IMG/VR virus record: IMGVR_UViG_3300045970_000794 | Coordinates: 248,001-312,000 of that record | DNA: 64,000 nucleotides | Direction: 5' to 3' (one strand) | Program-made: the position numbers and the translations under genes | Shown here: positions 32,066-55,650 of the stretch, piece after piece | Numbering within the stretch: position 1 is the first letter of the stretch | Layout of the letters: the number at the start of each line of letters is the position of its first letter | The notes under the pieces: generated by a model | What the model saw: the letters and a program-made list of their open reading frames with translations, nothing else | Told to the model about the DNA's origin: nothing | The model's database searches: none

Positions 32066-33595
32066 ATGAGTAACACAATGTTAACAGTTAAAAAACCAGG
32101 TGGTATTACAACCCGTGGTAAAATCGTAATCGCAACTTTATTTGTTGGATTACTTGCAATCCTTTATTTCTCGTTCAGAGATAAAATTACTAAATTCGCT
32201 GGTGGTGCAACTAGTGGTGATGTGATTAAAATTGGCGTTGTTACATGGCCAGGTTATATCGGCGGTGAATACATGAACAACGGTTTTGCACCAAATATGG
32301 AATGCCGTTTCTATAAAGAATATGGTATTCAAGTTGAATTTAAAGTTCTTAACGATTTCTTAGCATCTAGAAAAGCTTTCGAATCTGGTGAAGTTGACCT
32401 TTTATGGTGTACTGCCGATGCTTTCCCAACTGAAATGGGTAGAGAAGGTACAATGGCTTTAAGTAATCCTAAATTCCTTTTCCAATCTGACTGGAGCCGT
32501 GGTGGTGATGCGATTGTTGTTGATATGTCTATCGATAAAATTTCTGACCTTAAAGGTAAAACTGTAGCTGTTGCTGAAGGAACTCCTAGTCACTCATTCC
32601 TTATTAACTTACTTAAAGCTAATAACATGACATTATCCGATATTGATGTGAAATCAGTACCAAGTGCTGTTGACGCTGCCGATGTTTTTAAACAAGGTGC
32701 ATGTGTAGCCTCAGTTGTATGGTCACCAGATGATATCGATTGTCTTAAAAAAGTTTCTGGTTCTAAAGTTTTAGCCTCTACTAAAGAAGCAACATATATT
32801 ATTGCCGATGGTTTTATTGCTAAAGACGAATATATTAAAAAGAACATTGAAAAATTACAAAAGCTTTACGATGGTTGGATGGTCGGTGCTGCTGAAATTA
32901 ATGCAAATAAAGATGGTGCTAGAAATAAAGCCGCAAAAATATTAGCCGATAATTTCCAAATGACTGAAAAAGATGCGTTAGCTTCACTTGATAACGTTAG
33001 ATTAGCCAATCACGGTGATAATAAAAATTTCTTCGGTCTTGGTGAATCAAATTGCGTAACTGGTGATATGTTATACACTACTATGTCTGGTGAATATCAA
33101 AAAATTAAAAAAGTTGAAAATCCTTTAATGTGGAGAGAAGTATCTGACGCAGTATTAGTTAAAGCATCAACCTTAACTGGTAACGGCCAATTAGCTGAAG
33201 TTAGTAAGAAATTTACCCCAGCTGGTTCAGATGTTAAAGAACGTAAAGCTTATTCTACTAAGAAAGTAACTATCAACTTCCCAAGTGGTTCTTATGCATT
33301 AACTGGTGAAGCTAAAGCTAAAATCAATAGAGAATACTCTGAAATTGCTAAAACCAATGGTGGTGCTAGAATTAGAGTAGAAGGAAATACTGATAACTCA
33401 GGTAATCCTAACTTTAACCAAACACTTTCTTATAATAGAGCTAAAGCTGTTGCAGAATATTTAACAAATCAATTTGGATTTGACTTCAATAGGTTCATTG
33501 TAATTGGAAATGGTTCTAAGCATGCAATAGATGCTGGTTCAAAAGGTGATGATGAAAATTATAGAACTACAGATTTCGGATTAATAAAAGAGTAA
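32066..33595 (+). CDS. ABC substrate-binding protein (SsuA/NMT1-like) fused to an OmpA-like C-terminal domain
   Basis: TWPGYIG, QSDWSRGGDAIV, DLKGKTVAV; IRVEGNTD..N..LS..RAKAV..YL. Confidence 0.85.
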   Translation: MSNTMLTVKKPGGITTRGKIVIATLFVGLLAILYFSFRDKITKFAGGATSGDVIKIGVVTWPGYIGGEYMNNGFAPNMECRFYKEYGIQVEFKVLNDFLASRKAFESGEVDLLWCTADAFPTEMGREGTMALSNPKFLFQSDWSRGGDAIVVDMSIDKISDLKGKTVAVAEGTPSHSFLINLLKANNMTLSDIDVKSVPSAVDAADVFKQGACVASVVWSPDDIDCLKKVSGSKVLASTKEATYIIADGFIAKDEYIKKNIEKLQKLYDGWMVGAAEINANKDGARNKAAKILADNFQMTEKDALASLDNVRLANHGDNKNFFGLGESNCVTGDMLYTTMSGEYQKIKKVENPLMWREVSDAVLVKASTLTGNGQLAEVSKKFTPAGSDVKERKAYSTKKVTINFPSGSYALTGEAKAKINREYSEIAKTNGGARIRVEGNTDNSGNPNFNQTLSYNRAKAVAEYLTNQFGFDFNRFIVIGNGSKHAIDAGSKGDDENYRTTDFGLIKE

Positions 33596-33612
33596 CAATC
33601 ATTAACTAAATG

Positions 33613-33642
33613 AAAAAGCACCTAAAATTTTGGGTGCTTTTT
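33613..33642 (+). terminator. Intra-operon hairpin/terminator
   Basis: AAAAAGCACC..GGTGCTTTTT between the binding-protein and permease genes. Confidence 0.65.
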
Positions 33643-33656
33643 TTAAAAACTTTAAT

Positions 33657-34619
33657 ATGGAAACATTCAAATCCCTTTTTAAATTAGGTGGAACAATCTC
33701 TAATAGATTATCTACCATTGTTGGAGTCTTAGGATTCGTATTCTTAATGGCTGTTTGGTATATTATTACCAGTGCAACTGGTTGGGTTAAACCTCAAACA
33801 ATTCCAAGCCCAAATAGTGTTCTATTCGCTTTTGTTGAAATGTTTTCAAAAGACCAGTTTTTACTTATGGTCTGGAAACCGTTATTGCTTTTAATTGGTA
33901 TTATTATTACATTATATTTCATACCATTCACAAAATTTTTAGTTAATTACGCCATTAGTGCTCTATTAATTTTATTCGCAATTTACCTTTTGATGGGTAA
34001 TTTCATAATGAAAGATGCACCAATTTCAATGAATATCTTATATTCACTACAACTAAATGTCGCTGGATATCTTAAAGCAATATTAATATCGATACCAATC
34101 GGATTCTTAATCGCATTATTCCCTTTACTAAGAAGTATGTTCAGTAAATATATCGATGCAATTAGATATGTTCCATTAACTGGTCTTATCGGTGTGTTCA
34201 TCGCATGGTTCGGAATCGCTTCTGGTATGAAAATTAATTTCCTAGCTTTTGGTATCATCGTATACCTATTACCTATCGTTGTTCAACGTGTTTATGAAAC
34301 TGAAAAAATTCACTTAGATACTATATTCACACTAGGTGCTAATAGCTGGCAAACGTTCCGTAAAATATACTGGCCATCCGTTATTTCTAAACTAATAACT
34401 GATATTAGAGTTATCACTGCAATATCTTGGACCTATATAATCGTAGCTGAAATGGCTAACAATGAAGGCGGTCTTGGTGGATTTGTATATACTTGCGCTA
34501 GACAAAGTAGATTGGATAAAATATTTGCTGTAATCCTTATTATCGTTATAATTGGATTCTTACAAGACATTCTATTCAAATGGTTAGATAAAAAAATTAA
34601 TAAATTTAAATACGTATAA
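33657..34619 (+). CDS. ABC transporter permease (NitT/TauT-like)
   Basis: Multiple TM segments; EAA-like TLGANSWQTFRKIYWP; SWTYIIVAE..GLG. Confidence 0.9.
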   Translation: METFKSLFKLGGTISNRLSTIVGVLGFVFLMAVWYIITSATGWVKPQTIPSPNSVLFAFVEMFSKDQFLLMVWKPLLLLIGIIITLYFIPFTKFLVNYAISALLILFAIYLLMGNFIMKDAPISMNILYSLQLNVAGYLKAILISIPIGFLIALFPLLRSMFSKYIDAIRYVPLTGLIGVFIAWFGIASGMKINFLAFGIIVYLLPIVVQRVYETEKIHLDTIFTLGANSWQTFRKIYWPSVISKLITDIRVITAISWTYIIVAEMANNEGGLGGFVYTCARQSRLDKIFAVILIIVIIGFLQDILFKWLDKKINKFKYV

Positions 34620-34621
34620 TC

Positions 34622-35530
34622 ATGGGTTATTTCGATTCAAAAAAAGATACTAAAGTAATTAGTGATATCGTTAGAGGTACTAGCGAAGAACCAACCGTTA
34701 AAGCCAAAACAATTAAATTTGATGAGTCAAAATATGACCCAATTGATAAAATTCAATTGAAGAATATCAATCAAGTTTATACTGATAAAAATGGTAATAA
34801 AAATGTTGTATTCAATGACTTTGACCTTGATATTAAAGATATTAAAGGTGGTGGTCAGTTCACAGTTATTGTCGGTGCCAGCGGTTGTGGTAAATCTACA
34901 TTGCTAAGATATATTGCTGGTCTTCAAAAACCAACATCTGGTGAAATATACCTTAATGGTAATCTAAGAACTAATAATGATAGAGTTGGTATGGTTTTCC
35001 AACAATACTCTTCAATGACATGGGCTACAGTACTTGAAAATGTTGCATTACCATTGCAGTTAAAAGGTGTTTCTAAAGCTGAAAGAGAAGAACAAGCTAT
35101 GGAAATGATTAAAATCGTTAACCTTGAAGGTCATGAAAATAAATTCGCACAATATCCAATCCTTAGTGGTGGTCAATTACAACGTGTAGCTATTGCTAGA
35201 AGCTTAATGGCTAATAGTGAAATGCTATTACTTGATGAACCATTCGGTGCCTTAGATATTAATACTAGATTGAGAATGCAAGATATGCTAATCGATATCT
35301 GGTCCAAAGTTAAAGGTGACCCAACATTCATTTTTGTTACCCACGATTTATCCGAAGCGGTTTATCTTGCTGATGAGATTTATGTGTTAAAGGCTAACCC
35401 AGGTGAAGTGTGTGAATTCATCGAAATTGATATCCCGATGAAAAGAACTTCAGCAATCAAAAGGACTCCAAAATTTATGGAATATGTTCACCACCTTGAA
35501 GATTTAATGATGAAGATTAATATCAAATAA
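34622..35530 (+). CDS. ABC transporter ATP-binding protein (NitT/TauT-like)
   Basis: GASGCGKST, LSGGQLQR, LLLDEPFGALD, VTHD. Confidence 0.95.
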   Translation: MGYFDSKKDTKVISDIVRGTSEEPTVKAKTIKFDESKYDPIDKIQLKNINQVYTDKNGNKNVVFNDFDLDIKDIKGGGQFTVIVGASGCGKSTLLRYIAGLQKPTSGEIYLNGNLRTNNDRVGMVFQQYSSMTWATVLENVALPLQLKGVSKAEREEQAMEMIKIVNLEGHENKFAQYPILSGGQLQRVAIARSLMANSEMLLLDEPFGALDINTRLRMQDMLIDIWSKVKGDPTFIFVTHDLSEAVYLADEIYVLKANPGEVCEFIEIDIPMKRTSAIKRTPKFMEYVHHLEDLMMKINIK

Positions 35531-37622: not shown

Positions 37623-38030
37623 ATGGGAAATCTTAAAAATACCATCATTGGCGATAGAGATATGGCTATGAAAATGCATGATGCAGCCTTAACCAGCGTT
37701 CTTAGAACACTTATTGGTGAACTTGACCGAGTAGATAAAAATCCATCCGATGATGTTGTACTTAAAACAATCTCAAAAATAGTTGATGCTAACATTGAAT
37801 TCAATATGAATGAATTCGAAACAGCTATCCTATCCCAATACCTTCCAAAAAAATTAAGTGAACTTGAAATTACTACTATAGTTAAACATCAAATCACTAC
37901 CAACCAATATACTGGTATGAAAGATATGGGTAAAATAATGAAATTCTTCCAAGATAACTACCCTAGTCAATATGATGGTAAATTAGTTAGTAACATTATT
38001 AAAACAGAACTCCTAATCCCCGCCAATTAA
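37623..38030 (+). CDS. GatB/YqeY domain protein
   Basis: E..IL..YLPKKLS, KDMGKIMK, DGKLVS. Confidence 0.85.
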   Translation: MGNLKNTIIGDRDMAMKMHDAALTSVLRTLIGELDRVDKNPSDDVVLKTISKIVDANIEFNMNEFETAILSQYLPKKLSELEITTIVKHQITTNQYTGMKDMGKIMKFFQDNYPSQYDGKLVSNIIKTELLIPAN

Positions 38031-38071
38031 ATGGAGGGGCTGGGGTGGTTTTTAATTTAGCTACCAAACAC

Positions 38072-39262
38072 ATGGAATATAAAGAATTAGCATCATACGG
38101 CGATGAAAGTGTTACGAAACTATTAGATATGTATCGAAATGATAAATATAATACTAGAGTCGTATACTATAATAGTCGTGAAAAAGCAATCAAATGTAGA
38201 TTAGCCGCTTTCATTAAAGAAGATAATACATTTGAATTAGCTATATTCAAAAAAACTTGGGGTATATCCAAAATTAATGTGATTTATAGTCGAGAAGTTA
38301 AAGAAATGTCAATATTTAAATCCAAAAAAGGATATTATACCGTTAAAGGTAAATTGATTAAACCATTAATTCTTAATGATATTTGGCTAAGTAGATTCTC
38401 AAAAGAAATATTGTTATTCATTAAAGATTATATACCTTTCATTGAACTACAAGTTAAACATAATCTACTTGTTCATAAATCATTTAACTATATCATTGAA
38501 CATAAATTAACTTCATTAAAGAGAATGACCATATTTGAGTATGGTATTCCTTATTCTAGAATTAAGAAACTAATGGAAAGACCATCATTCTATGACTCAT
38601 TACCCGATTTTAAAAGAGTGCTTTATTATAATAAAGAGTATATTACCAAACTAGAAAATATTAATCTGGAAATCTTTGATAAACAACATCATTTTCATAT
38701 ATTCAGCGATGCTGCCAAAATGGCCCGATGTCTTAATGTTAAAATCAATGCATCATGGTCAATTAAAAGACTTAAAGAAGAACATGATAATTTAGCGGTT
38801 ACATTAACCGAAATAGTATTCACAGCCGATAATCGAGAATTATCTATTAGTAAAGTATATAGAGACTTCTCAATATTCGCCAACTATCGACTATTACAAA
38901 CAACTAAAGAATTAGCACTAGAAAGCCAAAAACAAAAACATTGCATAGTGACTTATTCTAACAAAGTTAATATGCATGCTTGCGGTATCTATCACATTGA
39001 TGGATATACCCTAGAATTAATAATTAGCTCAAATAAATTAGTCATTAACCAATTCAGAGGATATGGCAATGATGATGCACCCGATGAATTAAAACAATCA
39101 GTTCAACTTAAATTGGATGAATATCACCAAAAACTTAATGGTGAAAATAAAAAAATTAATGACACAATTAATATCTTTAGTAGTGACTTTGATAATCTTG
39201 AACAAGTTCAACAAATTAATATGGTTAACCTTGCTAATGATGATATATTAAATATTTTTTAA
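38072..39262 (+). CDS. PcfJ-like domain protein
   Basis: ELALES..QKHCI.TY, TLEL, QFRGYGN. Confidence 0.65.
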   Translation: MEYKELASYGDESVTKLLDMYRNDKYNTRVVYYNSREKAIKCRLAAFIKEDNTFELAIFKKTWGISKINVIYSREVKEMSIFKSKKGYYTVKGKLIKPLILNDIWLSRFSKEILLFIKDYIPFIELQVKHNLLVHKSFNYIIEHKLTSLKRMTIFEYGIPYSRIKKLMERPSFYDSLPDFKRVLYYNKEYITKLENINLEIFDKQHHFHIFSDAAKMARCLNVKINASWSIKRLKEEHDNLAVTLTEIVFTADNRELSISKVYRDFSIFANYRLLQTTKELALESQKQKHCIVTYSNKVNMHACGIYHIDGYTLELIISSNKLVINQFRGYGNDDAPDELKQSVQLKLDEYHQKLNGENKKINDTINIFSSDFDNLEQVQQINMVNLANDDILNIF

Positions 39263-39963: not shown

Positions 39964-40320
39964 ATGAGCGGAGGACGATATACCAAAAAAATACCACCAT
40001 ACGTTTATTTCGTTGGTGAAGATGGTAATTGGATTCAAGGCCCCTATGTTAATCCCCCTAAACGTGATGACTATCGGAAATTTAAGGTTTTCGAAATATC
40101 ATCACATATGGGGGTTGAGATAGTTAAAGCCGATGACCAATTTATTGACCTAGTGTTTAACTCAATCATAACTAAACTGGAAACAGAGGATAAACTTATC
40201 ACCGAAGCTATCGGTGATATAATCGTAATAGCTAAATTGAATGATTACGAAACAGCAATAGAATTAATTAAAAAACAATTTATTGTTATTGATAAACAAG
40301 ATATACACAATGGAAAATAA
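39964..40320 (+). CDS. Hypothetical protein
   Basis: 118 aa ORF. Confidence 0.6.
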   Translation: MSGGRYTKKIPPYVYFVGEDGNWIQGPYVNPPKRDDYRKFKVFEISSHMGVEIVKADDQFIDLVFNSIITKLETEDKLITEAIGDIIVIAKLNDYETAIELIKKQFIVIDKQDIHNGK

Positions 40321-40510
40321 CGAAATACTCAAAACTTCAGATGTGTGGCAAAAAGAATACCCACATATCACAGTTCTCGACTCAGATGGTTGGGATAGGA
40401 AAAATTATCAATACTCTTGGTTCGAAGAAAAAATAACCTATGCGGAATATACTAATAGACTAATGATGTCAACTTGTATGGGATTTAACCCAGAAATGAA
40501 ACAGCAATAA
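40310..40510 (+). CDS. Hypothetical protein
   Basis: ATG 40310; DSDGWDR motif. Confidence 0.6.
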   Translation: MENNEILKTSDVWQKEYPHITVLDSDGWDRKNYQYSWFEEKITYAEYTNRLMMSTCMGFNPEMKQQ

Positions 40511-40654
40511 TCCCCATGAGGAAAATTTTCCCAAAAAAATTTTTTGTCATCCAGAAAAAATAAAAAAATAGGGTCGATATATAGGCAAAAACACTATACC
40601 CCAAAATTTCTAAAAAAATTTTTCCGAGGGTCCGACCCCCAACCTTACGGGCGT

Positions 40655-40712
40655 GGGAGGGGGGGTGTAAAAGGGGGGATACGGGAGGTAGGGGTAACGG
40701 AGGGGAGGGGGG
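40655..40712 (+). other. G-run tract with G-quadruplex potential
   Basis: GGG-A-G7-TGTAAAA-G6-ATAC-GGG-AGGTA-G4-TAACGGA-G4-A-G6. Confidence 0.8.
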
Positions 40713-40783
40713 TATATTTATTTTTAATATACTCTTTACTTTTTAATTTTTATTAGTATTTATAATATATAAATTAATATATT

Positions 40784-41401
40784 ATGGAGAATAAGATAAA
40801 GAAAAAATTAAAGAGAAGAGGAAATAAATTATATCAAACATATTTTTTTAATCCTGACAATATCATCAATGAAATTATCAATCAAATTGATAATAATGAA
40901 ATAATTAATGAAAATAATTGTGAAACTGTTTTTAATATTAGTGATAAAAATATTCCATTAGTATATGAATTGATTTCTTATTATCCTAAAAAGTTAAAAG
41001 AATTAAAATATATAAATGATGAAACGATAAATGAATTGTATAAAGTATATGGTGAAACTATATCAATAATAAAAGAGAATAGAGATGGTCGAACAAATGT
41101 ACGTGGTAAAATAACTAATAGTGCATTGTCACGAGCAAAGTTATATAATTTACCATGTGATATTATAAGTGAAGATATTATTTTAGTACGGACTTGTAAA
41201 TATTTAAACATACCAATTCAATACGGAAATTCATCATCAGCAAATAATTCACCTTCAATAGATAAAATAAATCCAAATTTAGGTTATGTAAAAGGTAATA
41301 TTGAAATAATATCAATGTTAGCTAACAATATGAAGAGTTCAGCAACTATTGAAGAGTTATTAACTTTTTCAAAGAACGTATTAAAAATTTATCAAAGATA
41401 A
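40784..41401 (+). CDS. HNH-like (His-Me finger) endonuclease
   Basis: C..L..P...SPSIDKINPNLGYVKGNI.IIS..AN.MKS. Confidence 0.7.
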   Translation: MENKIKKKLKRRGNKLYQTYFFNPDNIINEIINQIDNNEIINENNCETVFNISDKNIPLVYELISYYPKKLKELKYINDETINELYKVYGETISIIKENRDGRTNVRGKITNSALSRAKLYNLPCDIISEDIILVRTCKYLNIPIQYGNSSSANNSPSIDKINPNLGYVKGNIEIISMLANNMKSSATIEELLTFSKNVLKIYQR

Positions 41402-41563: not shown

Positions 41564-41908
41564 TTAAGCAATCATTGATTTTCGTTTAACTAATCTACTT
41601 TCAACCACATCGAATGCTTTAGTTTTATGAACGTCTTCGCTAACTTCATCGATAGAAAGGATAGCAATTAAAGATTTTTTAACTAGAGGACTTTCAACCA
41701 CATCAAATGCTTTAGTACTTTGTTTATCGGCACTACATTCATCGATAGAAAGGATAGCCACATCGATATTGGTGCTGGGATTAATCGAAGGCAAAGCGGT
41801 ATCGTAGCTGAATGATACGAAAGTATCATCATTAGATGTTTGTACTTGTGCATTAGCACAGAAAGTTAGAGTAAATAAGCAAATTGCGAACATGATTAAG
41901 TTTTTCAT
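41564..41908 (-). CDS. Secreted protein with two 31-aa internal repeats
   Basis: Signal peptide; AILSIDE..TKAFDVVES twice (93-bp period, 41597-41758). Confidence 0.65.
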   Translation of the reverse strand: MKNLIMFAICLFTLTFCANAQVQTSNDDTFVSFSYDTALPSINPSTNIDVAILSIDECSADKQSTKAFDVVESPLVKKSLIAILSIDEVSEDVHKTKAFDVVESRLVKRKSMIA

Positions 41909-41920
41909 AATTTTAAAATT

Positions 41921-41988
41921 TTAGGTTAATAATATAATACAAAGGTAAATAAAATAAATGAGAAAAACAAATATTATTTAATATATTT
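41921..41988 (-). promoter_or_regulatory. Module P2
   Basis: -7 box 41947-41940. Confidence 0.8.
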
Positions 41989-42312
41989 TGCTAAATAATT
42001 ACGATAATTTTGTCTATATTTTTTATAGTATTGTTTTTTAATAATATTAAGATTATAACCAATGGATTCCAATTCATTTTTTAAATCATTATATTCGGTT
42101 TCAGTAGCTAATTTGGATATTGAAACGCAATGCAAATACATTGCTTCAGAGTGTTGTCCGTTATGCATATATGATAATATATTACCACGACTTGATTCTA
42201 TTTCATAAGGGAATAAAGCAATAATATCACCTTCTTTAAATTTTCTGAAAATTACATCAGTTTTATTAATATCTTTTTTAAACGGGAATAAAGTAATATT
42301 ATCTTTTTTCAT
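41974..42312 (-). CDS. Hypothetical phage protein
   Basis: VIFRKF..IIALFP..SY.H.GQHS; follows P3. Confidence 0.7.
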   Translation of the reverse strand: MKKDNITLFPFKKDINKTDVIFRKFKEGDIIALFPYEIESSRGNILSYMHNGQHSEAMYLHCVSISKLATETEYNDLKNELESIGYNLNIIKKQYYKKYRQNYRNYLAKYIK

Positions 42313-42324
42313 GGTGTTTTGGTT

Positions 42325-42394
42325 TTAGTATTGATTAATATAATGCAAAGGTAATATAAATAATTGAGAAAAACAAATATTATTTAATATATTT
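42325..42394 (-). promoter_or_regulatory. Module P3
   Basis: -7 box 42353-42346. Confidence 0.85.
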
Positions 42395-42589
42395 TTAAAT
42401 ATAATATTTATCAGCTGTAAATTGTTTATCAAAAACGACCATACTATTTGATTTTGAAGGGTATTTATTAACTAAATTAATAGCTTCATCACGTGTTAAG
42501 CCTCTTCTTATTATTTCACGTCTTCTTGAAACTCTGAACACTTTATATACTTTATAAGTTCCAATGTATTTTTTTTCAATTGTTTTCAT
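42395..42589 (-). CDS. Hypothetical protein
   Basis: 64 aa; follows P4. Confidence 0.65.
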   Translation of the reverse strand: MKTIEKKYIGTYKVYKVFRVSRRREIIRRGLTRDEAINLVNKYPSKSNSMVVFDKQFTADKYYI

Positions 42590-42600
42590 AGTGGTTTGTT

Positions 42601-42670
42601 TTAGTATTGATTAATATAAGACAAAGGTAATATAAATAATTGACAAAAACAAATATTATTTAATATATTT
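42601..42670 (-). promoter_or_regulatory. Module P4
   Basis: -7 box 42629-42622. Confidence 0.85.
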
Positions 42671-42730
42671 TTATTTTTATTTTATATTGCTTGGTATCAT
42701 TGTATTATAGAGAAAAGATGAAAATAAATT

Positions 42731-42800
42731 GAAAATAATTGCATTTTTATTTGGTAGATTAAAATAATTGTTGTAGATTTGCAATATCAAATTAATCAAT
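42731..42800 (+). promoter_or_regulatory. Module P5 (class B upstream element)
   Basis: -7 box TAGATTTG 42774-42781. Confidence 0.75.
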
Positions 42801-42822
42801 TTAACCACTAAAACATATTATT

Positions 42823-43395
42823 ATGAAAAACGTAGAAATTCAAATTATCGCTTCTGACAATGCAACTAGAGTTATTAACACTTTAAAAAATGCAGTTAGA
42901 AAATCACCTACAGGCGTTTCAATGATTAGCATTAGAAATTATACTAATAGTTACAATGAAATTAGTAACTCACGTATTAACATTGGTGCAAGTTACGAGA
43001 ATGCAAAACAAAAAGATATTAACTTTTTGAAAGCCCTTGACATCACTACATTAGAGAATAGAAAATCTGACGTTGTTACTTTAGAAATGGCAAGAATTGA
43101 ATTAATCAAATCTTTTGAAACACCCGATAAAAATCGTTCTAATGGTCAAATCGATGCTTATACTCATATTGTAAGCGGTTTAAAAGTACATAATGAAACT
43201 TCTAGGGTATATATTTATGGTTTGAGAGTAGCAAAGGAAGTTATTGTAAAAGGTGAATATCCAGTAGTGAATAGCAAACCACTTACTATTGCAAAAAATG
43301 AATTGAGAAAATTGTTAAAAACTAATGAATTTGTAAATTTTGCAATTGATATGACTGAAAGTATTCGTGCAAATGGTGAAGAGTTAACATTCTAA
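42823..43395 (+). CDS. Hypothetical protein
   Basis: 190 aa with own promoter and terminator. Confidence 0.75.
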   Translation: MKNVEIQIIASDNATRVINTLKNAVRKSPTGVSMISIRNYTNSYNEISNSRINIGASYENAKQKDINFLKALDITTLENRKSDVVTLEMARIELIKSFETPDKNRSNGQIDAYTHIVSGLKVHNETSRVYIYGLRVAKEVIVKGEYPVVNSKPLTIAKNELRKLLKTNEFVNFAIDMTESIRANGEELTF

Positions 43396-43412
43396 GCTAA
43401 TCAACTAAAATT

Positions 43413-43444
43413 AAAAGGGGTGAATTTATTCACTCCTTTTTTTT
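43413..43444 (+). terminator. Intrinsic terminator
   Basis: AAAAGGGGTGAA-TTTA-TTCACTCCTTTT plus T run. Confidence 0.8.
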
Positions 43445-43603
43445 GTTCTTATAAATTTAAGCTATTAATTAAATAGGTAATAATATAAATTAGGCTTCAT
43501 TAGATAAGCTATAAACGACTTTAATAATGTTTTAATATTTGGATATAGTTTGGATATTGGAGTGCCTTAAATCGCTTTAAAATGCTTAATGAAAATAATT
43601 ATA

Positions 43604-43669
43604 AAATATATTAAATAATATTTGGAATTATAGATTTTAATTTGTACCTTTGCATTATATTAACCAATA
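43604..43669 (+). promoter_or_regulatory. Module P6
   Basis: -7 box TACCTTTG 43645-43652. Confidence 0.85.
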
Positions 43670-43682
43670 AACCTTTTATATT

Positions 43683-43958
43683 ATGGAAACTACATTGAAT
43701 ATGAATGAACACAAATTTTATGTCTTAACTGATGATACTGGTAAAATAGTTGCTATCATTAGGACTGAAAGTATTCCACCATTTTGGAATAAGATTGAAC
43801 AAGCTATTAGAGAAGACCTTTGTTTAGAAAAGGATGTTAAAGTTAAATTAGTATCTAGTATTAGTCAGAATGAGAATACAACTATTTTCATTGATATTGA
43901 ATTTGGTGGTGGTATATGGGTTGGTAGTTATGAGTTAACGCAAACGGCGGTATATTAA
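43683..43958 (+). CDS. Hypothetical protein
   Basis: 91 aa with own promoter and terminator. Confidence 0.65.
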   Translation: METTLNMNEHKFYVLTDDTGKIVAIIRTESIPPFWNKIEQAIREDLCLEKDVKVKLVSSISQNENTTIFIDIEFGGGIWVGSYELTQTAVY

Positions 43959-43964
43959 ACAAAG

Positions 43965-43988
43965 AAACCCAGTAGAGATACTGGGTTT
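43965..43988 (+). terminator. Intrinsic terminator
   Basis: AAACCCAGTA-GAGA-TACTGGGTTT plus T run. Confidence 0.85.
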
Positions 43989-44028
43989 TTTTTTGGTATG
44001 ATACACAATTTAAAAGATACACAATTTA

Positions 44029-44042
44029 TACACAAATGTGTA
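44029..44042. promoter_or_regulatory. TACAC-N4-GTGTA palindrome 1
   Basis: TACACAAATGTGTA, preceded by two ATACACAATTT half-sites. Confidence 0.6.
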
Positions 44043-44099
44043 CTTTCTGAAAAATATTAGTATTTATTAGTAAATAATATATTATTAATATTTTAATTT

Positions 44100-44738
44100 A
44101 TGCCATATAAAGATAAAGATAAAGAAAAACAATACCAAAAGGAATACAGAGAAAAGAATAAAGAATATTTCGAAGAATATCGAAAAATACATAAATATAA
44201 AAATAATAAATCGTATCAGGAATATAGTGAAAATAATAAAGAATCGTCCAAAAAATATTATAAAACTAAGGATAAAATTGTATTACAAAAAAAAGAATAT
44301 TATGAAAATAATAAAGAAAAATTAAAGCAATCTCAAAAGGAATGGCGAGAAAATAATAAAGATTATACGAATAAAATTGCTCGTAATAAATATAAAACAG
44401 ACCCATTATTTAAACTTAAACGAAGTATAAGGCGTATAATTGCTTTCAGTCTTAAAAATAAAGGACTCAAAAAAACCAGTAGAGCACACCTTATTTTAGG
44501 CTGTTCTTTTAATGATTTTAAAACTCATATTGAATCGAAATTTGAATATTGGATGACTTGGGATAACTATGGTTTATATAACGGTACGTTAAATTATGGA
44601 TGGGATATTGACCACATTATACCATTAGCAACGGCAATAAATGAAGATGAAGTGATTAGATTAAATCATTATACTAATTTGCGACCATTATGTAGTCATA
44701 TTAATCGGGTAATAAAACGTAATAAAATTGTGTATTAG
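44100..44738 (+). CDS. HNH homing-endonuclease-like protein (paralog of 4761-5363)
   Basis: GLYNGT.NYGWDIDHII.LATA..E.....LNHYTNL.PLCS.IN shared with 4761. Confidence 0.75.
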   Translation: MPYKDKDKEKQYQKEYREKNKEYFEEYRKIHKYKNNKSYQEYSENNKESSKKYYKTKDKIVLQKKEYYENNKEKLKQSQKEWRENNKDYTNKIARNKYKTDPLFKLKRSIRRIIAFSLKNKGLKKTSRAHLILGCSFNDFKTHIESKFEYWMTWDNYGLYNGTLNYGWDIDHIIPLATAINEDEVIRLNHYTNLRPLCSHINRVIKRNKIVY

Positions 44739-44944
44739 GTATAGCGTTTACTAACTTCCTCCACGTATTTAATAACCATTTGAGAATGTTCTGTGGCTTT
44801 TTTCACGTAGTCGACATTAGGGTAATAGATTTTTCTATTAGGGTAGTTTTTCTTAACGAATTCAATAAGTTCCATAAGAACATCATTAGTATTATCGAGA
44901 GCGGTAAGAATGAGTTCACGTTCATCTATTTCTAATTGATTCAT
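44735..44944 (-). CDS. Hypothetical protein
   Basis: 69 aa; follows P7. Confidence 0.6.
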   Translation of the reverse strand: MNQLEIDERELILTALDNTNDVLMELIEFVKKNYPNRKIYYPNVDYVKKATEHSQMVIKYVEEVSKRYT

Positions 44945-44954
44945 AAGATTATTG

Positions 44955-45000
44955 GTTAAAGGTTAATGCAAAGATAAGGATAATATTTCTATTATCCAAA
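44955..45000 (-). promoter_or_regulatory. Module P7 with GAAA hairpin spacer
   Basis: TTTG-GATAATA GAAA TATTATCC-T-TATCTTTG. Confidence 0.75.
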
Positions 45001-45011
45001 TTTTTTTGCAT

Positions 45012-45404
45012 TTATTTTAATTGGTTATAAAAAATACCTTTTTCAGCATTTTCAAGGTCTTTACCAGTTGCTCCACGAAACCAAGCATCCCAATAAGTTC
45101 TTTGACAACTAGAATCCATTAAACGACCAATAATGATTTCTCTAATGTTTTCTTTATATGCTTGCATATCGCTTAATAAGTGGTCTGCAATGTCTTCATT
45201 TGATAACATAATATTTTTTACTGTAACATCTTTATTTAGTTTTAAAAATGTTTCCTCATACTTAGCTTTAGCTTCTTCTAATGTTTTAGCATCCACAATA
45301 CACCATTCTTCGGAGTTAAAAGAAGCTTCTTCAACTGTATTGTACTGTGTTAATGTTTCACACTTACAATCATCATCAATATCATATCCTAATATAAATT
45401 TCAT
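45012..45404 (-). CDS. Hypothetical protein
   Basis: ATG 45404 (MKFILG); the track start is a promoter TTG. Confidence 0.6.
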   Translation of the reverse strand: MKFILGYDIDDDCKCETLTQYNTVEEASFNSEEWCIVDAKTLEEAKAKYEETFLKLNKDVTVKNIMLSNEDIADHLLSDMQAYKENIREIIIGRLMDSSCQRTYWDAWFRGATGKDLENAEKGIFYNQLK

Positions 45405-45414
45405 AGCAGTAAGT

Positions 45415-45484
45415 TTTAATTGGTTAATACTTTGCAAAGATACTACAAATAATCCACATTACCAAATATTATTTAATATATTTT
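45415..45484 (-). promoter_or_regulatory. Module P8
   Basis: -7 box 45442-45435. Confidence 0.85.
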
Positions 45485-45500
45485 ATTCCAGTAAATGGGG

Positions 45501-45532
45501 AAAGGCTGTCCCCCACTACAAGGACAGCCCTT
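45501..45532 (-). terminator. Terminator hairpin
   Basis: GGCTGTCC..GGACAGCC stem. Confidence 0.7.
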
Positions 45533-45563
45533 TAACAAAATAATCAACCTTAAAAATAATCAC

Positions 45564-46109
45564 TTATTTAAATAAATCAAAAATAATTTCTTCTTTACAA
45601 TAACTTGGTACTTCAATTTCCAGACTTATCACATCCCTAGCCCATGTACCAATTAATTCAACATTACCTTTTTTTGCTTCGTGGTTAATATGATAATCAC
45701 CGCCGCCACGTCCGTTGCCTTCGCAAGTCATTAAAGGAAGTGGGTGTATAATCCAACCGTCAACATCAACACATTTTCTTTTATCAATGAATTGATTTTT
45801 GCTGTGGTTAACCAAGTAAGGGAATATTTCTCTTTTGATAACTGTATCAACTGGATTAACTTTTGTTTTATCAGCACATCTACCATATACATTGGATTTA
45901 AGACCTTTGCATTCATCAGCATAATCACCAGCCCAAACAACCCTTTGTGGCTTCTGCATTATTAAACTTTCGAATGCACCAACAAATCTGTTTAACAACC
46001 AAGAATGTTCCATAAGGTTAAGACCATTGTCATAGTCATGAGAATATATCCATGCTTTGACTGTTCTTTTATTGTCGCCTAAAATGGCGGGGTTATAATA
46101 CTGTCCCAT
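45564..46109 (-). CDS. Hypothetical phage protein
   Basis: ATG 46109 (MGQYY); LMEHSW, HPLPLMT..GNGRGGGD. Confidence 0.7.
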   Translation of the reverse strand: MGQYYNPAILGDNKRTVKAWIYSHDYDNGLNLMEHSWLLNRFVGAFESLIMQKPQRVVWAGDYADECKGLKSNVYGRCADKTKVNPVDTVIKREIFPYLVNHSKNQFIDKRKCVDVDGWIIHPLPLMTCEGNGRGGGDYHINHEAKKGNVELIGTWARDVISLEIEVPSYCKEEIIFDLFK

Positions 46110-46119
46110 AATATAAAGT

Positions 46120-46171
46120 TTTAATTGGTTAATATGATACAAAGGTAAGTAAAATATTTTAATAAACCAAA
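46120..46171 (-). promoter_or_regulatory. Module P9
   Basis: -7 box 46147-46140. Confidence 0.75.
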
Positions 46172-46551
46172 CTTTTTAACACTTTTCTTTCAATTACTTC
46201 ACTTTTTGCAAAGAAACATTGTTTACCCGATAAACTTGGAACATAGTCACTAACAACATACTCAACTAATACGAATCCATGTTTTAAGATTTCTCTATTA
46301 TACCCTTTAAACCATTTACGCAATTTATTAATGGTATCACAAGTGGAATAATATTTACTAATCATACCACGATGTGAGACTGGTAAATCTTCATATAATA
46401 TTGGGTGCCCATCTGATTTCCAACTATGTTCACGACAAACCTTACGTTGAAAATCCAATACCTCCTCAACATTATTGAATGGTTTCTCATCTGCTCTATA
46501 AAAACCATCCTCATCGAATGGGCTTTCATAACGATATATAGTCATTTCCAT
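46159..46551 (-). CDS. Hypothetical protein
   Basis: 130 aa; carries the leader motif but no promoter. Confidence 0.65.
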   Translation of the reverse strand: MEMTIYRYESPFDEDGFYRADEKPFNNVEEVLDFQRKVCREHSWKSDGHPILYEDLPVSHRGMISKYYSTCDTINKLRKWFKGYNREILKHGFVLVEYVVSDYVPSLSGKQCFFAKSEVIERKVLKSLVY

Positions 46552-46584
46552 AATACGATTGGTTTAATTGATTAATACTAACAC

Positions 46585-47175
46585 TTATTTGTTATAAAAC
46601 GTTGTGTATGCTTTATAGCTTTTTGAAATTGTATTATGATAATCGTCTTCATTTTTTAAACTTAAAGCAGTTATTAAAACATTCAGAATTTGAACGAGTG
46701 AATATAATTTTAAATTTTCTTGGTTATTACAATCAATATAATTGGTTTTATTATTATAATAATAACCGTATGCGCTTGTCCTTGTAAGTTTATTAAATAC
46801 TTCATAAAATCTAATTAACAATTCATTTTCATTATAAAGTTCTTTAAACTCTGTTGCTAACTTGTTTTTTATATCATTAGTCCAATTATCAACAATCAAT
46901 GAGTAAATAACGCCAAAAAAATAGTTTGGATGTTCCCTTAATCCCATATCCCAACATCTTTGTATAAAATCTGAATGTGTGAAACCTCCAAAAGTATTTT
47001 TATTTCCAATTGTCATTGTTGGAATGAGTAAAAACCCATAATTTCGTTTATCCCTTTTAATACGATTATTTTCATCTAATAAGAATTTTGCTTCATTAAC
47101 ATTTGCAAATAACACCCAAAAAGGATTTGGGCTAAATGATTTACATAATAATAAACCGCTTTCAATATTTTCCAT
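46585..47175 (-). CDS. Hypothetical protein
   Basis: 196 aa; follows P10. Confidence 0.6.
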   Translation of the reverse strand: MENIESGLLLCKSFSPNPFWVLFANVNEAKFLLDENNRIKRDKRNYGFLLIPTMTIGNKNTFGGFTHSDFIQRCWDMGLREHPNYFFGVIYSLIVDNWTNDIKNKLATEFKELYNENELLIRFYEVFNKLTRTSAYGYYYNNKTNYIDCNNQENLKLYSLVQILNVLITALSLKNEDDYHNTISKSYKAYTTFYNK

Positions 47176-47186
47176 GATTTTTGGTT

Positions 47187-47275
47187 TTAGTATTGATTAA
47201 TATAATGCAAAGGTAATAAAAAAAAGTTGCTATCCAAATTTTTTAGCAACTTTTTTCATATTATTTAATATATTT
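47187..47275 (-). promoter_or_regulatory. Module P10 (13-bp inverted repeat over the -33 box)
   Basis: -7 box 47215-47208; arms 47220-47232 and 47244-47256. Confidence 0.8.
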
Positions 47276-47792
47276 TACCAACTTGAACCATATTCACAAT
47301 AGCTAGAAATACCATTTATCTCATCAGCTTTCAATTCTCTAATGATAGGTGCTAACATTTTAACGGTATCTTTAAGGTCACCAAAATAGCTTTCATCATA
47401 TTGAGTACCACCAAAAAAGAAACCACTTTGACTTGGCAATAATCTTTCAGCTACCTTTGGGCTTTTTGATTTAACAACTCTTCTACAAAGTTCAATCAAT
47501 GTTTCTAATTGATTTAAACTAACTTCATAATCGCCACAATCGTCATTACCCTCTTGAACGTTCTGAACAAACCAAGCATGAATTTGATTAGATTTGCACC
47601 AGTAAGCAACGTTTTCAGTGATTTCAGTTACTCGTTTGAATTTGATGTTAATTTGATGTTAATTTTGACTTTCTTTTCACCTTCATTTTCGATGTAAACT
47701 TTTCTTGAAATGTCAATAACACCTTTAACCTTATTGTGTTCGTATTGAGCACCAATGTAGGTTTTTTTACTTAAATACATATCTAGTCCCAT
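47275..47792 (-). pseudogene. MGLDMYL-type phage gene frameshifted by an 11-bp tandem duplication
   Basis: TTTGATGTTAA x2 at 47641-47662; removing one copy gives a 168-aa ORF with YWCKSNQIHAWFV. Confidence 0.8.
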
Positions 47793-47803
47793 AATATAAA
47801 GTT

Positions 47804-47874
47804 TTAGTATTGATTAATATAATGCAAAGATACAAAATATAATTCAAATAAACAAATATTATTTAATATATTTT
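47804..47874 (-). promoter_or_regulatory. Module P11
   Basis: -7 box 47832-47825. Confidence 0.85.
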
Positions 47875-47886
47875 TAATTATTTTAC

Positions 47887-48082
47887 ATAAATAATGGGTT
47901 AGGTAACCACACCTAACCCAAATAATCAATTAATCAATATACTAAACACACTATGAAGACGTACTCAGTTTCTTTAAATAGTTAGTAGCTACCTCCGAAT
48001 TCAACCCTTAGTAAATCTATTAAGTACAAGTCAGTAGAAAGTTATGTACTTCGAGGGTAATTGCTATCTAACTATAATTTCT
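47887..48082 (-). ncRNA. Candidate structured small RNA (about 195 nt)
   Basis: Own promoter P12, no ATG, long bulged stem (48068-75 with 47978-85; 48050-66 with 47986-99), terminator 47895-47920. Confidence 0.55.
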
Positions 48083-54759: not shown

Positions 54760-54870
54760 TCATATACTATATAAGATATTAATTGTTGGCTCAAACCCTC
54801 TGAAACCCCTATGGCAACTCAAAAACATTCTTATTCCGTGAATAAGAATGATAGCAAATTAAAATATTTT

Positions 54871-54921
54871 GAAAATAATTCACTTTTTATTTGGTAGATT
54901 AAATTATTTTCACTACCTTTG
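54871..54921 (+). promoter_or_regulatory. Module P23 (class B)
   Basis: -7 box TACCTTTG 54914-54921. Confidence 0.8.
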
Positions 54922-55020
54922 TATTGTCATTAAGACGTGACGATACCCACAACGGTCTCGGAAGGTATACTCCAACATGCAATGTTGTCGGTGGAACACT
55001 CCAATATGCCCGCTATTTTC
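54922..55020 (+). ncRNA. Candidate small RNA, copy B (3' end uncertain)
   Basis: Shares motifs with copy A; CAACAT-GCA-ATGTTG hairpin. Confidence 0.4.
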
Positions 55021-55278
55021 CTATGGGGAAATATTTGGAATTGTAAATTATTATTTGTAAGTTTGCATATGATTTAAATGGGACTGCGGTCCCACTGAAT
55101 TTGCTCGCTCATTAAATAAATGGGTTAGCCTTGCCATTCCTATTACTGAATATATCAGCGATACGGATTCCTATACCCATTTTTTTGCGAATTTGGGCAT
55201 CGGCATAGCTATTTCCAAAAATTTCTGGCGAAAAATATTAACAAAAATTTTTGCACAAGTCCGATTCCTATTAGAATA

Positions 55279-55640: not shown

Positions 55641-55650
55641 TTAGAGGGGC

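What the first reader, a model, noticed from the sequence alone, without database searches (positions are those of the whole stretch)
40511..40760. G-quadruplex-like tract and A/T-tracts at the architectural boundary of the genome
Seen: in very AT-rich DNA, six runs of 3-7 G within 58 nt on one strand, preceded by clustered AAAATTTT tracts and C-runs. It has no credible ORF. Left of it are long conserved genes; from 41.4 kb the promoter-cassette array points back toward it. Inference: a genome end or pac site, a replication origin or terminus, or a transcription barrier.
Basis: partly seen in the sequence, partly recalled or inferred. Interest (0 to 1): 0.65.

Follow-up and report, generated by a model that had tools for sequence, protein, structure and literature searches.

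The report
Conserved G-run element of jumbo phages
The G-rich tract is real and belongs to a roughly 200-base non-coding element, present once per genome and conserved in over a hundred uncultured large phages of Bacteroidota; it is most likely where DNA replication starts, but this is not proven.

Summary
Window 40,649-40,712 holds 42 G in 64 nt, against a genome mean of 8.5. It contains all three G runs of six or more and the only canonical G4 motif in the 362-kb phage genome. Phased A/T tracts and C runs precede it.

It is not a local oddity. Its core 16-mer, GGGGGGATACGGGAGG, occurs in at least 134 distinct AT-rich phage contigs with the same layout, although their terminases are only 41-60% identical to ours. 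The layout is A/T-tract palindromes, then C runs, the 16-mer, then G runs.

In relatives the element heads a long block of leftward-transcribed genes. Perfect DnaA boxes are strongly enriched within 200 nt of it. Assemblies often break inside it, at scattered positions.

The window's copy passes a family profile test, but it has no DnaA box and an HNH endonuclease gene sits directly downstream. I found no skew inflection, no Rfam family and no significant RNA fold. The terminase is T4-like and lies 36 kb away.

Best reading, at confidence 0.4: a replication-initiation site, possibly primed by an R-loop or G4. The rivals are a transcription control hub, a packaging site or genome end, a small RNA gene, and a T5-iss-like site.

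The parts
40520..40546 (+). A/T-tract palindromic motif 1 (GGAAAATTTTCCC, then A7T6). It corresponds to the TTTTCC(G/A)GAAAAATTTC repeats of relatives.
   Evidence: Sequence, tracts, relatives. Lies inside the profile match 40,522-40,631.
40551..40577 (+). Two A tracts followed by the box AGGGTCGA. Relatives carry (G)GGGGTC(G/A) at the matching place.
   Evidence: alignment.
40599..40625 (+). C run plus A/T-tract motif 2 (CCCCAAAATTTCTAAAAAAATTTTTCC).
   Evidence: Local alignment to L266 runs from here to the end of the G tract.
40626..40640 (+). Palindromic box GAGGGTCCGACCCCC. It corresponds to GGGGATTATCCCC / GGCATTGACCCCCC of relatives.
40649..40712 (+). G-run cluster: 42 G in 64 nt and the only G4 motif of the genome.
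40673..40688 (+). Invariant 16-mer GGGGGGATACGGGAGG, the signature of the family.
   Evidence: 78 viral contigs and more than 120 metagenome contigs. No match in 400 other Bacteroidota genomes.
40713..40783 (+). Extremely AT-rich spacer up to the start codon of the HNH gene. It may be an unwinding element, or it may be the 5' flank of the inserted endonuclease gene.
   Evidence: The 70 nt starting at about 40,715 hold 66 A/T, the top 0.017% of genome windows. 40,757-40,806 resembles the start of the second HNH gene at 44,080-44,129 (D8).
40784..41401 (+). HNH / endonuclease VII-like homing endonuclease gene. It sits where relatives have DnaA boxes.
   Evidence: phrog_3322 at E = 6.6e-22 and phrog_1035.
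40310..40510 (+). Small conserved phage gene ending directly before the element, transcribed towards it.
   Evidence: phrog_11725 at E = 2e-21.
41913..42687 (-). First three of six repeated host-type promoter cassettes (-33 TTTG, 20 nt, -7 TACCTTTG), each upstream of a small - strand gene and pointing towards the element. Further copies lie at 45,408, 47,181 and 47,798.
   Evidence: Repeat family D1; promoter pattern count 30 against 5.

Best explanation
The tract is this phage's copy of a conserved, single-copy, non-coding DNA element of a clade of uncultured AT-rich jumbo phages. These phages have T4-type terminases and Bacteroidota-type promoters.

The most likely function is as the site where phage DNA replication is initiated. 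Proposed mechanism, all inferred:
1. The phased AnTn tracts give a bent and easily opened flank.
2. The invariant 16-mer and the neighbouring G/C runs bind a conserved protein, either from the phage or from the host.
3. Transcription running into the G-rich strand, here from the + strand operon that ends at 40,510, makes a G-rich RNA. That RNA stays paired to the C-rich template as an R-loop, which G4 folding of the displaced strand would stabilise, and it primes leading-strand synthesis. This is how T4 oriF/oriG, ColE1 and mitochondrial OH work.
4. In most relatives, host DnaA bound to adjacent boxes would then help load the phage's DnaB-like helicase. The boxes often sit in the loop of a G-arm/C-arm inverted repeat.

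The window's copy has lost the DnaA boxes and the TATATAA box, and an HNH endonuclease gene abuts it. It may therefore be a reduced variant, or a copy that has moved.

What is shown: the element exists, it is conserved and single-copy, DnaA boxes associate with it, and its gene context is as described. Everything about the mechanism is inferred.
For: 1. It is unique and extreme within the genome.
2. The 16-mer occurs in 78 viral and more than 120 metagenome contigs. About 134 distinct AT-rich loci share the order A/T motifs, C runs, 16-mer, G runs. It does not occur in 400 other Bacteroidota genomes.
3. The TerL proteins of the two carriers whose TerL was compared (G003 and G001, which carries a variant core) are only 41-44% identical to ours, so neutral DNA would not be conserved.
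4. A profile of the upstream part alone, built from 117 relatives, picks window 40,522-40,631 as the best hit in the whole genome (E = 0.023). The full profile gives E = 3e-4.
5. Perfect DnaA boxes: 25 lie in bins 0-200 and 12 in the other bins out to +-1500 nt. The independent metagenome set gives 39 in -100..+200 and 17 elsewhere, with 26 of 30 in one orientation. In G010, 4 of the genome's 6 perfect boxes lie within 1.1 kb of the element. In G007, 2 of 10 lie about 100 nt from it.
6. In 30 of 64 loci with a box there is an inverted repeat of at least 8 bp around it, and the arm sequences differ between loci.
7. In relatives the element heads a block that is 87-100% leftward-transcribed.
8. 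The genome has a DnaB-like helicase but no DnaA.
9. Known precedents: T4 oriF/oriG are a promoter plus an unwinding element that form an R-loop; ColE1 and mitochondrial OH use G-rich hybrids or G4 (PMC4412123); G4 is essential in HCMV oriLyt (PMC11350156, abstract as listed).
Against: - The window's own copy has no DnaA box with one mismatch or fewer within 4 kb, and the whole genome has only one perfect box, 253 kb away.
- It also lacks the TATATAA box of relatives.
- About half of the relatives have no perfect box nearby.
- There is no GC-skew inflection, although skew here follows the direction of transcription.
- In relatives no strongly AT-rich segment follows the boxes.
- Some relatives have C runs where others have G runs, and 22 of 109 have no canonical G4 motif. 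A long G-rich transcript is therefore not universal.
- The gene context in this window is convergent, which differs from relatives.
- A second non-coding region with 12-nt iterons at 54.8-55.65 kb is a rival place for an origin.
- There is no replication, R-loop or protein-binding data of any kind.
Confidence: 0.4

Rival explanations
1. Transcription control hub. The element would be a compound regulatory region at the head of the early, host-transcribed gene block. Its bent A/T tracts would act as upstream promoter elements, the 16-mer and G/C runs would be operator sites for a phage regulator, the DnaA boxes would tune a neighbouring promoter, and the G runs might also stop read-through.
For: - In relatives it lies at the head of a long one-directional block of small genes.
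- In one relative (L121, read by eye) the leftmost A/T motif overlaps a plausible -33 TTTG of the first leftward gene.
- In type I relatives the DnaA box occupies the -33 place of a TAACTTTG promoter in front of a conserved gene (read by eye).
- In G009, mini versions (an A run plus GGGGGTAGGGGG) recur upstream of three small genes.
- In this window it lies between convergent units, next to the cluster of host-type promoters.
Against: - Promoter regions rarely keep an invariant 16- to 20-mer across phages whose TerL is about 42% identical.
- The element occurs once per genome, whereas promoters are many.
- No -33/-7 or sigma-70-type promoter is found inside 40,511-40,760.
- The context differs between this genome and its relatives.
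Confidence: 0.2
2. Packaging recognition site or physical genome end. The small terminase subunit would bind the bent A/T tracts and the G-run repeats, and the DNA would be cut here.
For: - It is single-copy, with bent A tracts and repeated short motifs, as in known pac sites.
- Contigs very often end in it: 6 of 57 viral contigs, 14 of 49 whole metagenome contigs, and one Bacteroidota MAG contig. The 297,623-bp contig G001 both begins and ends inside its G-run cluster.
- Our record is only a circular assembly with a 127-bp end overlap, so its true ends are unknown.
Against: - The break points scatter from about -74 to +96 nt. That fits assembly failure in a G-rich, structure-prone stretch of variable length.
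- Contigs of 27 kb and 4.6 kb from two runs cross the site without a difference.
- TerL is of the T4 gp17 type. From established knowledge, T4 gp17 packages by headful without a fixed site. It lies 36 kb away.
- DnaA boxes have no role in packaging.
- G001's two ends share no terminal repeat.
Confidence: 0.1
3. Gene for a small G-rich non-coding RNA. It would be transcribed from the TATATAA-like box and start in the G run.
For: - In most relatives a conserved TATATAA or TATTTAA directly precedes the 16-mer.
- C runs upstream and G runs downstream can pair into a two-tier hairpin in many relatives.
Against: - The window copy lacks the TATA-like box (it has TGTAAAA).
- Its fold is no better than shuffled sequence: z = -0.78 on the + strand and -1.49 on the - strand.
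- There is no Rfam match, even at E <= 1.
- In L120 and L156 the upstream C run is a G run, which abolishes the nested hairpin.
- In the relatives inspected by eye (L086, L090, L134) the hairpins are not followed by a T run.
- Sequence downstream of the core is poorly conserved.
Confidence: 0.08
4. A DNA-entry or anchoring site like the proposed injection stop signal of phage T5. There, a conserved non-coding region with DnaA boxes is proposed to hold the incoming DNA, through membrane-bound DnaA, at the border of the first-expressed genes.
For: The T5 iss region is a conserved, complex non-coding region with ordered DnaA boxes beside the pre-early genes. In some T5-like phages an HNH endonuclease gene splits it (bioRxiv 10.1101/866236). 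Here too there are DnaA boxes in relatives, an adjacent block of small genes with host-type promoters, and an abutting HNH gene.
Against: - The T5 model is itself a hypothesis.
- T5 has long terminal repeats and fixed ends, for which there is no evidence here.
- There is no sequence similarity to T5.
- The window's copy has no DnaA box.
Confidence: 0.07

Closest known systems
Phage T4 origins oriF (uvsY) and oriG (gene 34): R-loop origins
   Same: Both are short non-coding sites in a phage with T4-type packaging genes. In T4, transcription into the site forms a persistent RNA-DNA hybrid that primes replication (PMC4412123). Here a + strand operon runs into a G-rich non-template strand that is followed by very AT-rich DNA.
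   Different: There is no MotA-type middle promoter and no sequence similarity. The G/C-run cluster, the invariant 16-mer and the DnaA boxes of relatives are unknown at T4 origins. R-loop formation was not tested.
ColE1 RNA II origin and mitochondrial CSB II / OH (G-rich hybrid or G4 priming)
   Same: A G-rich non-template strand downstream of a promoter gives a stable hybrid or G4 that sets the priming site (PMC4412123). From my own knowledge, ColE1-type plasmids also carry a DnaA box just downstream, used to load the helicase on the displaced strand. That order, G-rich then DnaA box, matches most relatives.
   Different: There is no homology, and no RNase H or Pol I dependence is known. Some relatives have C runs in place of G runs. 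The window copy has no DnaA box.
DnaA-dependent origins (bacterial oriC, P1 oriR)
   Same: Clusters of consensus TTATCCACA boxes in fixed orientation lie beside AT-rich DNA in relatives.
   Different: Relatives have only 1-5 boxes and about half have none. The window copy has none. The dominant conserved feature is a G-run core that was not found in 400 sampled Bacteroidota genomes.
Phage lambda ori iterons
   Same: Short repeats built of C3-5 and G3-5 arms round an A tract, giving intrinsically bent DNA bound by an initiator (from my own knowledge). The G/C-run plus A-tract boxes here have the same flavour.
   Different: Lambda ori lies inside the O gene and has four regular 19-bp iterons. 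Here there is no regular iteron and no O-like gene was identified.
Phage T5 injection stop signal region
   Same: A conserved, complex non-coding region with DnaA boxes at the edge of the earliest genes, interrupted by an HNH gene in some members (10.1101/866236).
   Different: A different phage type, no sequence similarity, no known terminal repeats here, and the function in T5 is itself only proposed.
G4-dependent viral origin (HCMV oriLyt)
   Same: A G4 motif inside an origin is needed for replication (PMC11350156).
   Different: That is a eukaryotic virus with an unrelated sequence and unrelated proteins.

Membership tests
The conserved G-run element family defined here (uncultured AT-rich jumbo phages) | Exact 16-mer GGGGGGATACGGGAGG | tested here: met
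   Window 40,673-40,688. Found in 78 viral contigs and more than 120 metagenome contigs.
The conserved G-run element family defined here (uncultured AT-rich jumbo phages) | Homologous upstream part (A/T-tract motifs, GGGTC box, C runs) in the same order and orientation | tested here: met
   An nhmmer profile without the 16-mer, built from 117 relatives, gives 40,522-40,631 on the + strand as the best hit of the whole genome, E = 0.023. The full profile gives E = 3e-4. Collinear local alignment to L266.
The conserved G-run element family defined here (uncultured AT-rich jumbo phages) | One copy per genome, in non-coding DNA | tested here: met
   It is the only G4 motif and the only cluster of G runs of six or more, and no protein family matches the overlapping ORF. 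Relatives G003, G007 and G008 show no second three-run G cluster, but G009 and G010 have extra paired G runs within a few kb of the element.
The conserved G-run element family defined here (uncultured AT-rich jumbo phages) | Position at the head of a leftward-transcribed gene block | tested here: not met
   In relatives 87-100% of the upstream coding sequence is on the - strand. In the window the upstream genes are on the + strand.
DnaA-dependent origin (oriC type) | Cluster of DnaA boxes | tested here: not met
   No box with one mismatch or fewer within 4 kb of the element, and one perfect box in the whole genome, at G000 34,929. The feature is met in many relatives.
DnaA-dependent origin (oriC type) | Adjacent AT-rich unwinding element | tested here: inconclusive
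   The 70 nt after the G tract hold 66 A/T, the top 0.017% of the genome, but they may belong to the inserted HNH gene. Relatives show only modest AT enrichment, at -200..-100.
DnaA-dependent origin (oriC type) | Supports initiation of replication | not testable with these tools
   This needs plasmid replication or marker-frequency experiments.
T4-type R-loop origin | Promoter directing transcription into the site | tested here: inconclusive
   No promoter pattern lies inside the element. The + strand operon, with host-type promoters at 28.6 and 32.1 kb, runs into it.
T4-type R-loop origin | Persistent RNA-DNA hybrid | not testable with these tools
   No RNA runs hold this sequence.
G-quadruplex-forming sequence | Four or more G3+ runs with loops of 1-7 nt | tested here: met
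   Also present in 87 of 109 relatives.
G-quadruplex-forming sequence | Folds into a G4 in vitro or in vivo | not testable with these tools
   Needs circular dichroism, DMS footprinting or polymerase-stop assays.
Packaging site / genome terminus | Pile-up of molecule ends at a fixed position | not testable with these tools
   Only Logan contigs are available. They cross the site unbroken. Contig breaks in relatives are scattered.
Packaging site / genome terminus | Lies in or beside the terminase genes, with a terminase type that cuts at a fixed site | tested here: not met
   TerL is at window 2,460-4,244, 36 kb away, and its best matches are T4 gp17-type terminases. That T4 gp17 packages by headful is established knowledge, not a result here.
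Known RNA family (Rfam 15) | Match to a covariance model | tested here: not met
   No match at gathering score in the window. None at E <= 1 at the element in L001 or in five relatives.

The most novel reading that the evidence does not exclude
This is the first phage replication origin built around a G-quadruplex or R-loop-forming G-run core. A still unknown protein would recognise the invariant 16-mer, and in most members the element would recruit host DnaA to a box held in a G-arm/C-arm hairpin. That would make it a new origin architecture shared by a large clade of uncultured Bacteroidota jumbo phages.
Probability: 0.2. Interest if true: 0.8.

Novelty: new variant of a known kind. Interest (0 to 1): 0.6.

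Why it matters
Very little is known about how large phages of Bacteroidota start replication, package their DNA or switch gene expression, and none of the phages carrying this element has been cultured.

A single-copy element with an invariant 16-mer gives three things. It is a precise handle for experiments such as pull-downs, plasmid replication tests and G4 or R-loop mapping. It is a marker for recognising this phage clade in metagenomes. And it explains a practical nuisance, because assemblies of these genomes often break exactly here.

If it is an origin, it would link host DnaA and G-rich or R-loop priming in a phage, a combination I did not find described in my literature searches.

Tried and rejected
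- **Phage database.** Near and distant DNA searches of the element and its surroundings found nothing.
- **Neighbouring protein.** Loci related to the PcfJ-like neighbour protein: none.
- **Rfam.** No family in the window, at the element, or in five relatives.
- **RNA fold.** The element folds no better than shuffled sequence on either strand.
- **Skew.** Whole-genome cumulative GC skew shows no inflection at the site and follows gene direction.
- **Reads.** Only contigs of two pond-metagenome runs were available, so termini could not be tested. The contigs cross the site.
- **DnaA boxes in our genome.** None lie near the element. The single perfect box lies in what looks like a tRNA gene array.
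- **Conserved downstream gene of relatives (about 184 aa, 22 of 57 loci).** No Pfam, PHROG, PDB sequence, protein-atlas or Foldseek match (the model has pLDDT 81), and the gene is absent from our genome. It therefore says nothing about function.
- **Flavobacterium phage immuto.** Its only paired G run is in an unrelated intergenic spot.
- **Host mimicry.** The idea that the 16-mer copies a host chromosomal site was rejected: there was no match in 400 other Bacteroidota genomes.
- **TATAAATA box.** The idea that the TATAAATA at the left edge in relatives is a rightward late promoter was dropped. In our genome its complement, TATTTATA, is the form enriched upstream of ORFs (47 against 19), so it more likely belongs to the leftward gene.
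- **Similarity to G000 102,956-102,997.** This is ordinary AT-rich sequence.
- **Tandem repeats.** My first tandem-repeat script printed nothing because of a fault. TRF replaced it.
- **Second region.** The iteron of the second non-coding region has no exact relative in viral contigs.
- **Human-gut metagenome contigs.** Three metagenome matches came from assemblies labelled human-gut metagenome. These are microbial contigs. I left them out of the contig-end list and did not study them further.

Full report
**What the window is.** The window is bases 248,001-312,000 of a 362,102-bp IMG/VR phage record. The record has 30% G+C. Its two ends overlap by 127 bp, so it is a circular assembly and its true ends are unknown. 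About 89% of it is ORFs, mostly on the - strand, with + strand blocks at 208-241 kb and 277-293 kb.

The large terminase lies at window 2,460-4,244 on the - strand. It matches Terminase_6N, and its best matches are T4 gp17-type terminases, at 29% identity to Flavobacterium phages. The genome has a DnaB-like helicase but no DnaA.

The repeated cassettes at 41.9-47.9 kb read, on the - strand, TTTG, 20 nt, TACCTTTG. From established knowledge this is the Bacteroidota -33/-7 promoter form. Thirty ORFs have this pattern upstream, against 5 in the reverse-complement control, and they are concentrated at window 41.5-52 kb. One contig carrying the element was binned into a Bacteroidota MAG. The host is therefore probably a member of Bacteroidota, and the genes to the right of the finding are transcribed by the host polymerase, so they are presumably early genes.

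**The observation.** It is correct.
- Window 40,649-40,712 holds 42 G in 64 nt. The genome mean is 8.5 (sd 3.4) and the next best window has 32.
- All three G runs of six or more, and the only canonical G4 motif on either strand of the genome, lie here.
- AnTn tracts and C runs precede it.
- The only ORF across it, 70 aa from a TTG start, matches no family.
- Upstream lies a small conserved phage gene (phrog_11725). Directly downstream lies an HNH / endonuclease VII-like gene (phrog_3322).
- The cumulative GC skew shows no inflection.

**It is a conserved element.** A distant relative (G003, TerL 41% identical) has a G-run cluster that shares a long exact stretch with ours. The shared 16-mer, GGGGGGATACGGGAGG, occurs in 78 viral contigs. 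About 70 of these are AT-rich (27-40% G+C), and many are 200-335 kb long. After removing duplicates there are 57 plus 77 distinct AT-rich loci. The 16-mer does not occur in 400 other Bacteroidota genomes, about 1.4 Gb, so it is neither a chance word nor a host chromosomal motif.

The loci share one layout:
1. Two to four near-palindromic A/T-tract motifs of the type TTTTCC(G/A)GAAAAATTTC.
2. A GGGGTC box.
3. A palindromic box of the type GGGGATTATCCCC.
4. One or two C runs.
5. A TATATAA-like box.
6. The 16-mer, which continues as GGGG(A)GGGGGTA.
7. A variable cluster of G runs, sometimes C runs, separated by TA-rich spacers.

A canonical G4 motif is present in 87 of 109 relatives.

The window's copy has these parts in the same order. 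A profile made from the upstream part alone, without the 16-mer, finds window 40,522-40,631 as the best hit of the whole genome at E = 0.023. The full profile gives E = 3e-4.

**Context in relatives.**
- To the left of the element, 87-100% of coding sequence is on the - strand, so it is transcribed away from the element. To the right the strands are mixed. This was seen in the viral set and again in the metagenome set.
- The flanking genes are mostly small, unknown and not shared with our genome, apart from homing endonucleases.
- Perfect DnaA boxes (TGTGGATAA on the G-rich strand) are strongly concentrated next to the element. The viral set has 25 in the first 200 nt downstream and 12 in all other bins out to +-1500 nt. 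The metagenome set has 39 in -100..+200 and 17 elsewhere, with 26 of 30 in one orientation.
- In G010, four of the genome's six perfect boxes lie within 1.1 kb of the element. In G007, two of ten lie about 100 nt from it.
- In 30 of 64 loci with a box, an inverted repeat of at least 8 bp surrounds it. The arms are usually a G run and a C run, and their sequences differ from locus to locus. No chance control was run for this count.

**How the window's copy differs.**
- It has no DnaA box with one mismatch or fewer within 4 kb.
- It has TGTAAAA where relatives have TATATAA.
- Its upstream genes run towards it rather than away from it.
- The HNH gene begins 72 nt after the last G.
- The AT-rich stretch between the G tract and that gene is extreme: 66 of 70 nt are A/T, the top 0.017% of the genome. 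It may belong to the endonuclease insertion, because part of it resembles the start of the second HNH gene at 44.1 kb.

**Genome end or assembly break?** Contigs end at the element far more often than chance allows.
- Six of 57 viral contigs end within about 75 nt of it.
- The Bacteroidota MAG contig starts 9 nt before the 16-mer.
- 14 of 49 whole AT-rich metagenome contigs end within about 110 nt of it.
- The 297,623-bp contig G001 both starts and ends inside its own G-run cluster.

However, the end points scatter from about -74 to +96 nt relative to the 16-mer, and G001's two ends share no repeat. In our own sample, contigs of 27 kb (depth 56) and 4.6 kb (depth 8) cross the site without any difference. 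I read this as assembly failure in a G-rich, structure-prone stretch of possibly variable length. That itself fits strong secondary structure. Contigs cannot show molecule ends, so a real terminus is not excluded.

**RNA or DNA?**
- No Rfam family matches.
- The window's element folds no better than shuffled sequence.
- In many relatives the C runs and the 16-mer can pair into a two-tier hairpin. Two relatives, L120 and L156, have a G run in place of the first C run and lose that hairpin.
- In the relatives inspected by eye (L086, L090, L134), the hairpins around the DnaA boxes are not followed by T runs, so they are not intrinsic terminators.

The weight of evidence favours a DNA-level element, possibly one that acts when single-stranded.

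**Most likely function.** A single-copy, bent, repeat-rich non-coding site with an invariant core, oriented DnaA boxes beside it, and a position at the head of a one-directional gene block is best explained as a replication-initiation site.

T4-type phages are known to start replication from R-loops made by transcription into an unwinding element. ColE1 and mitochondrial OH use G-rich hybrids or G4 for the same purpose (PMC4412123). A G4 is essential in the HCMV lytic origin (PMC11350156). Here a + strand operon with host-type promoters at 28.6 and 32.1 kb runs into the G-rich non-template strand.

I put this reading at 0.4. The window's copy lacks the boxes, about half of the relatives lack perfect boxes, the G-versus-C polarity of the distal runs varies, and nothing was measured. 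The rivals are a transcription control hub (0.2), a packaging site or end (0.1), a small RNA gene (0.08) and a T5-iss-like entry site (0.07; 10.1101/866236).

**A second candidate region.** Window 54,764-55,650 is another long non-coding stretch. It has a host-type promoter on the + strand, four 12-nt tandem units, two A/T motifs like those of the element, and an RNA fold with z = -3.6. It could be a structured RNA or an iteron-type origin. It lowers my confidence that the G-tract element is this phage's only, or main, origin.

**Novelty.** I found no description of this element in the paper searches I ran, and no match in the phage database or in Rfam. The kind of thing is known: a phage cis element, probably an origin. 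The architecture appears new. It combines an invariant G-run core that is the sole G4 motif of an AT-rich genome, A/T-tract palindromes, and DnaA boxes that often lie inside G/C-arm inverted repeats.

Noticed in passing
window 54,764-55,650: An 887-nt stretch with no ORF over 51 aa. It has a Bacteroidota-type promoter on the + strand (TTTG near 54,891; TACCTTTG at about 54,916-54,923), four 12-nt tandem units GAATATACTATG at 55,274-55,320, two A/T motifs like those of the G-run element (55,210-55,253), and two copies of the palindrome ATACACAATTGTGTA. The RNA fold of 54,925-55,650 gives z = -3.6 against 20 shuffles. No Rfam match at E <= 1, and no exact relative in viral contigs. It may be a roughly 700-nt structured RNA or an iteron-type origin.
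   Followed up: partly
window 41,913-47,890 (six cassettes) and genome-wide: The repeated 93-nt cassettes upstream of small - strand genes carry the Bacteroidota -33 TTTG / -7 TAnnTTTG promoter form with a 20-nt spacer. Thirty ORFs in the genome have this pattern, against 5 in the control, mostly at window 41.5-52 kb. This points to a Bacteroidota host and an early-gene region.
   Followed up: partly
window 40,195 to 40,896: One low-depth contig in run X1 (depth 6.9 against 56.5) joins 40,195 to 40,896, skipping 700 nt. The skipped part includes the element and the start of the HNH gene. Only 21 letters lie on the shorter side, so this may be a related phage or an artefact.
   Followed up: no
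window 32,066-35,530: Three + strand genes look like an ABC transporter: a 509-aa protein, a multi-pass membrane protein, and an ATPase with a Walker A motif and the LSGGQ signature, read by eye from the translations. This would be an auxiliary metabolic module in a phage. No family scan was run on them.
   Followed up: no
window 37,623-39,262: A YqeY-like protein (PHROG name: tRNA amidotransferase, E = 3.7e-25) followed by a 405-aa PcfJ-like protein.
   Followed up: no
window 44,100-44,738: A second HNH / endonuclease VII-like gene 3.3 kb to the right of the first. Its N-terminal half is made of lysine-rich repeats (D3, 100). Relatives of it lie within 1-5 kb of the element in nine other phage contigs.
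   Followed up: partly
G000 33,500-35,150 (outside the window): A 1.6-kb stretch without ORFs that contains many GGATTCGAACC-type motifs on the - strand. It looks like a tRNA gene array, and the only perfect DnaA box of the genome lies inside it. No tRNA scan was run on it.
   Followed up: no
L090 (G009) 8,723, 9,146 and 9,629; L091 (G010) 185,505-190,270: In two relatives, short versions of the motif (an A run followed by GGGGGTAGGGGG, or G10) recur in the intergenic regions of small genes within about 3 kb of the main element, all in one orientation.
   Followed up: partly
window 41,585-41,758: An 81-nt direct repeat at 93-nt spacing inside the 114-aa - strand ORF 41,564-41,908, which starts with a signal-peptide-like segment. 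This is a small secreted repeat protein (D7).
   Followed up: no
window 4,001-5,000: The lowest G+C of the window (21%), with reversed skew. It lies next to the terminase gene and holds two small + strand ORFs. It may be an insertion.
   Followed up: no
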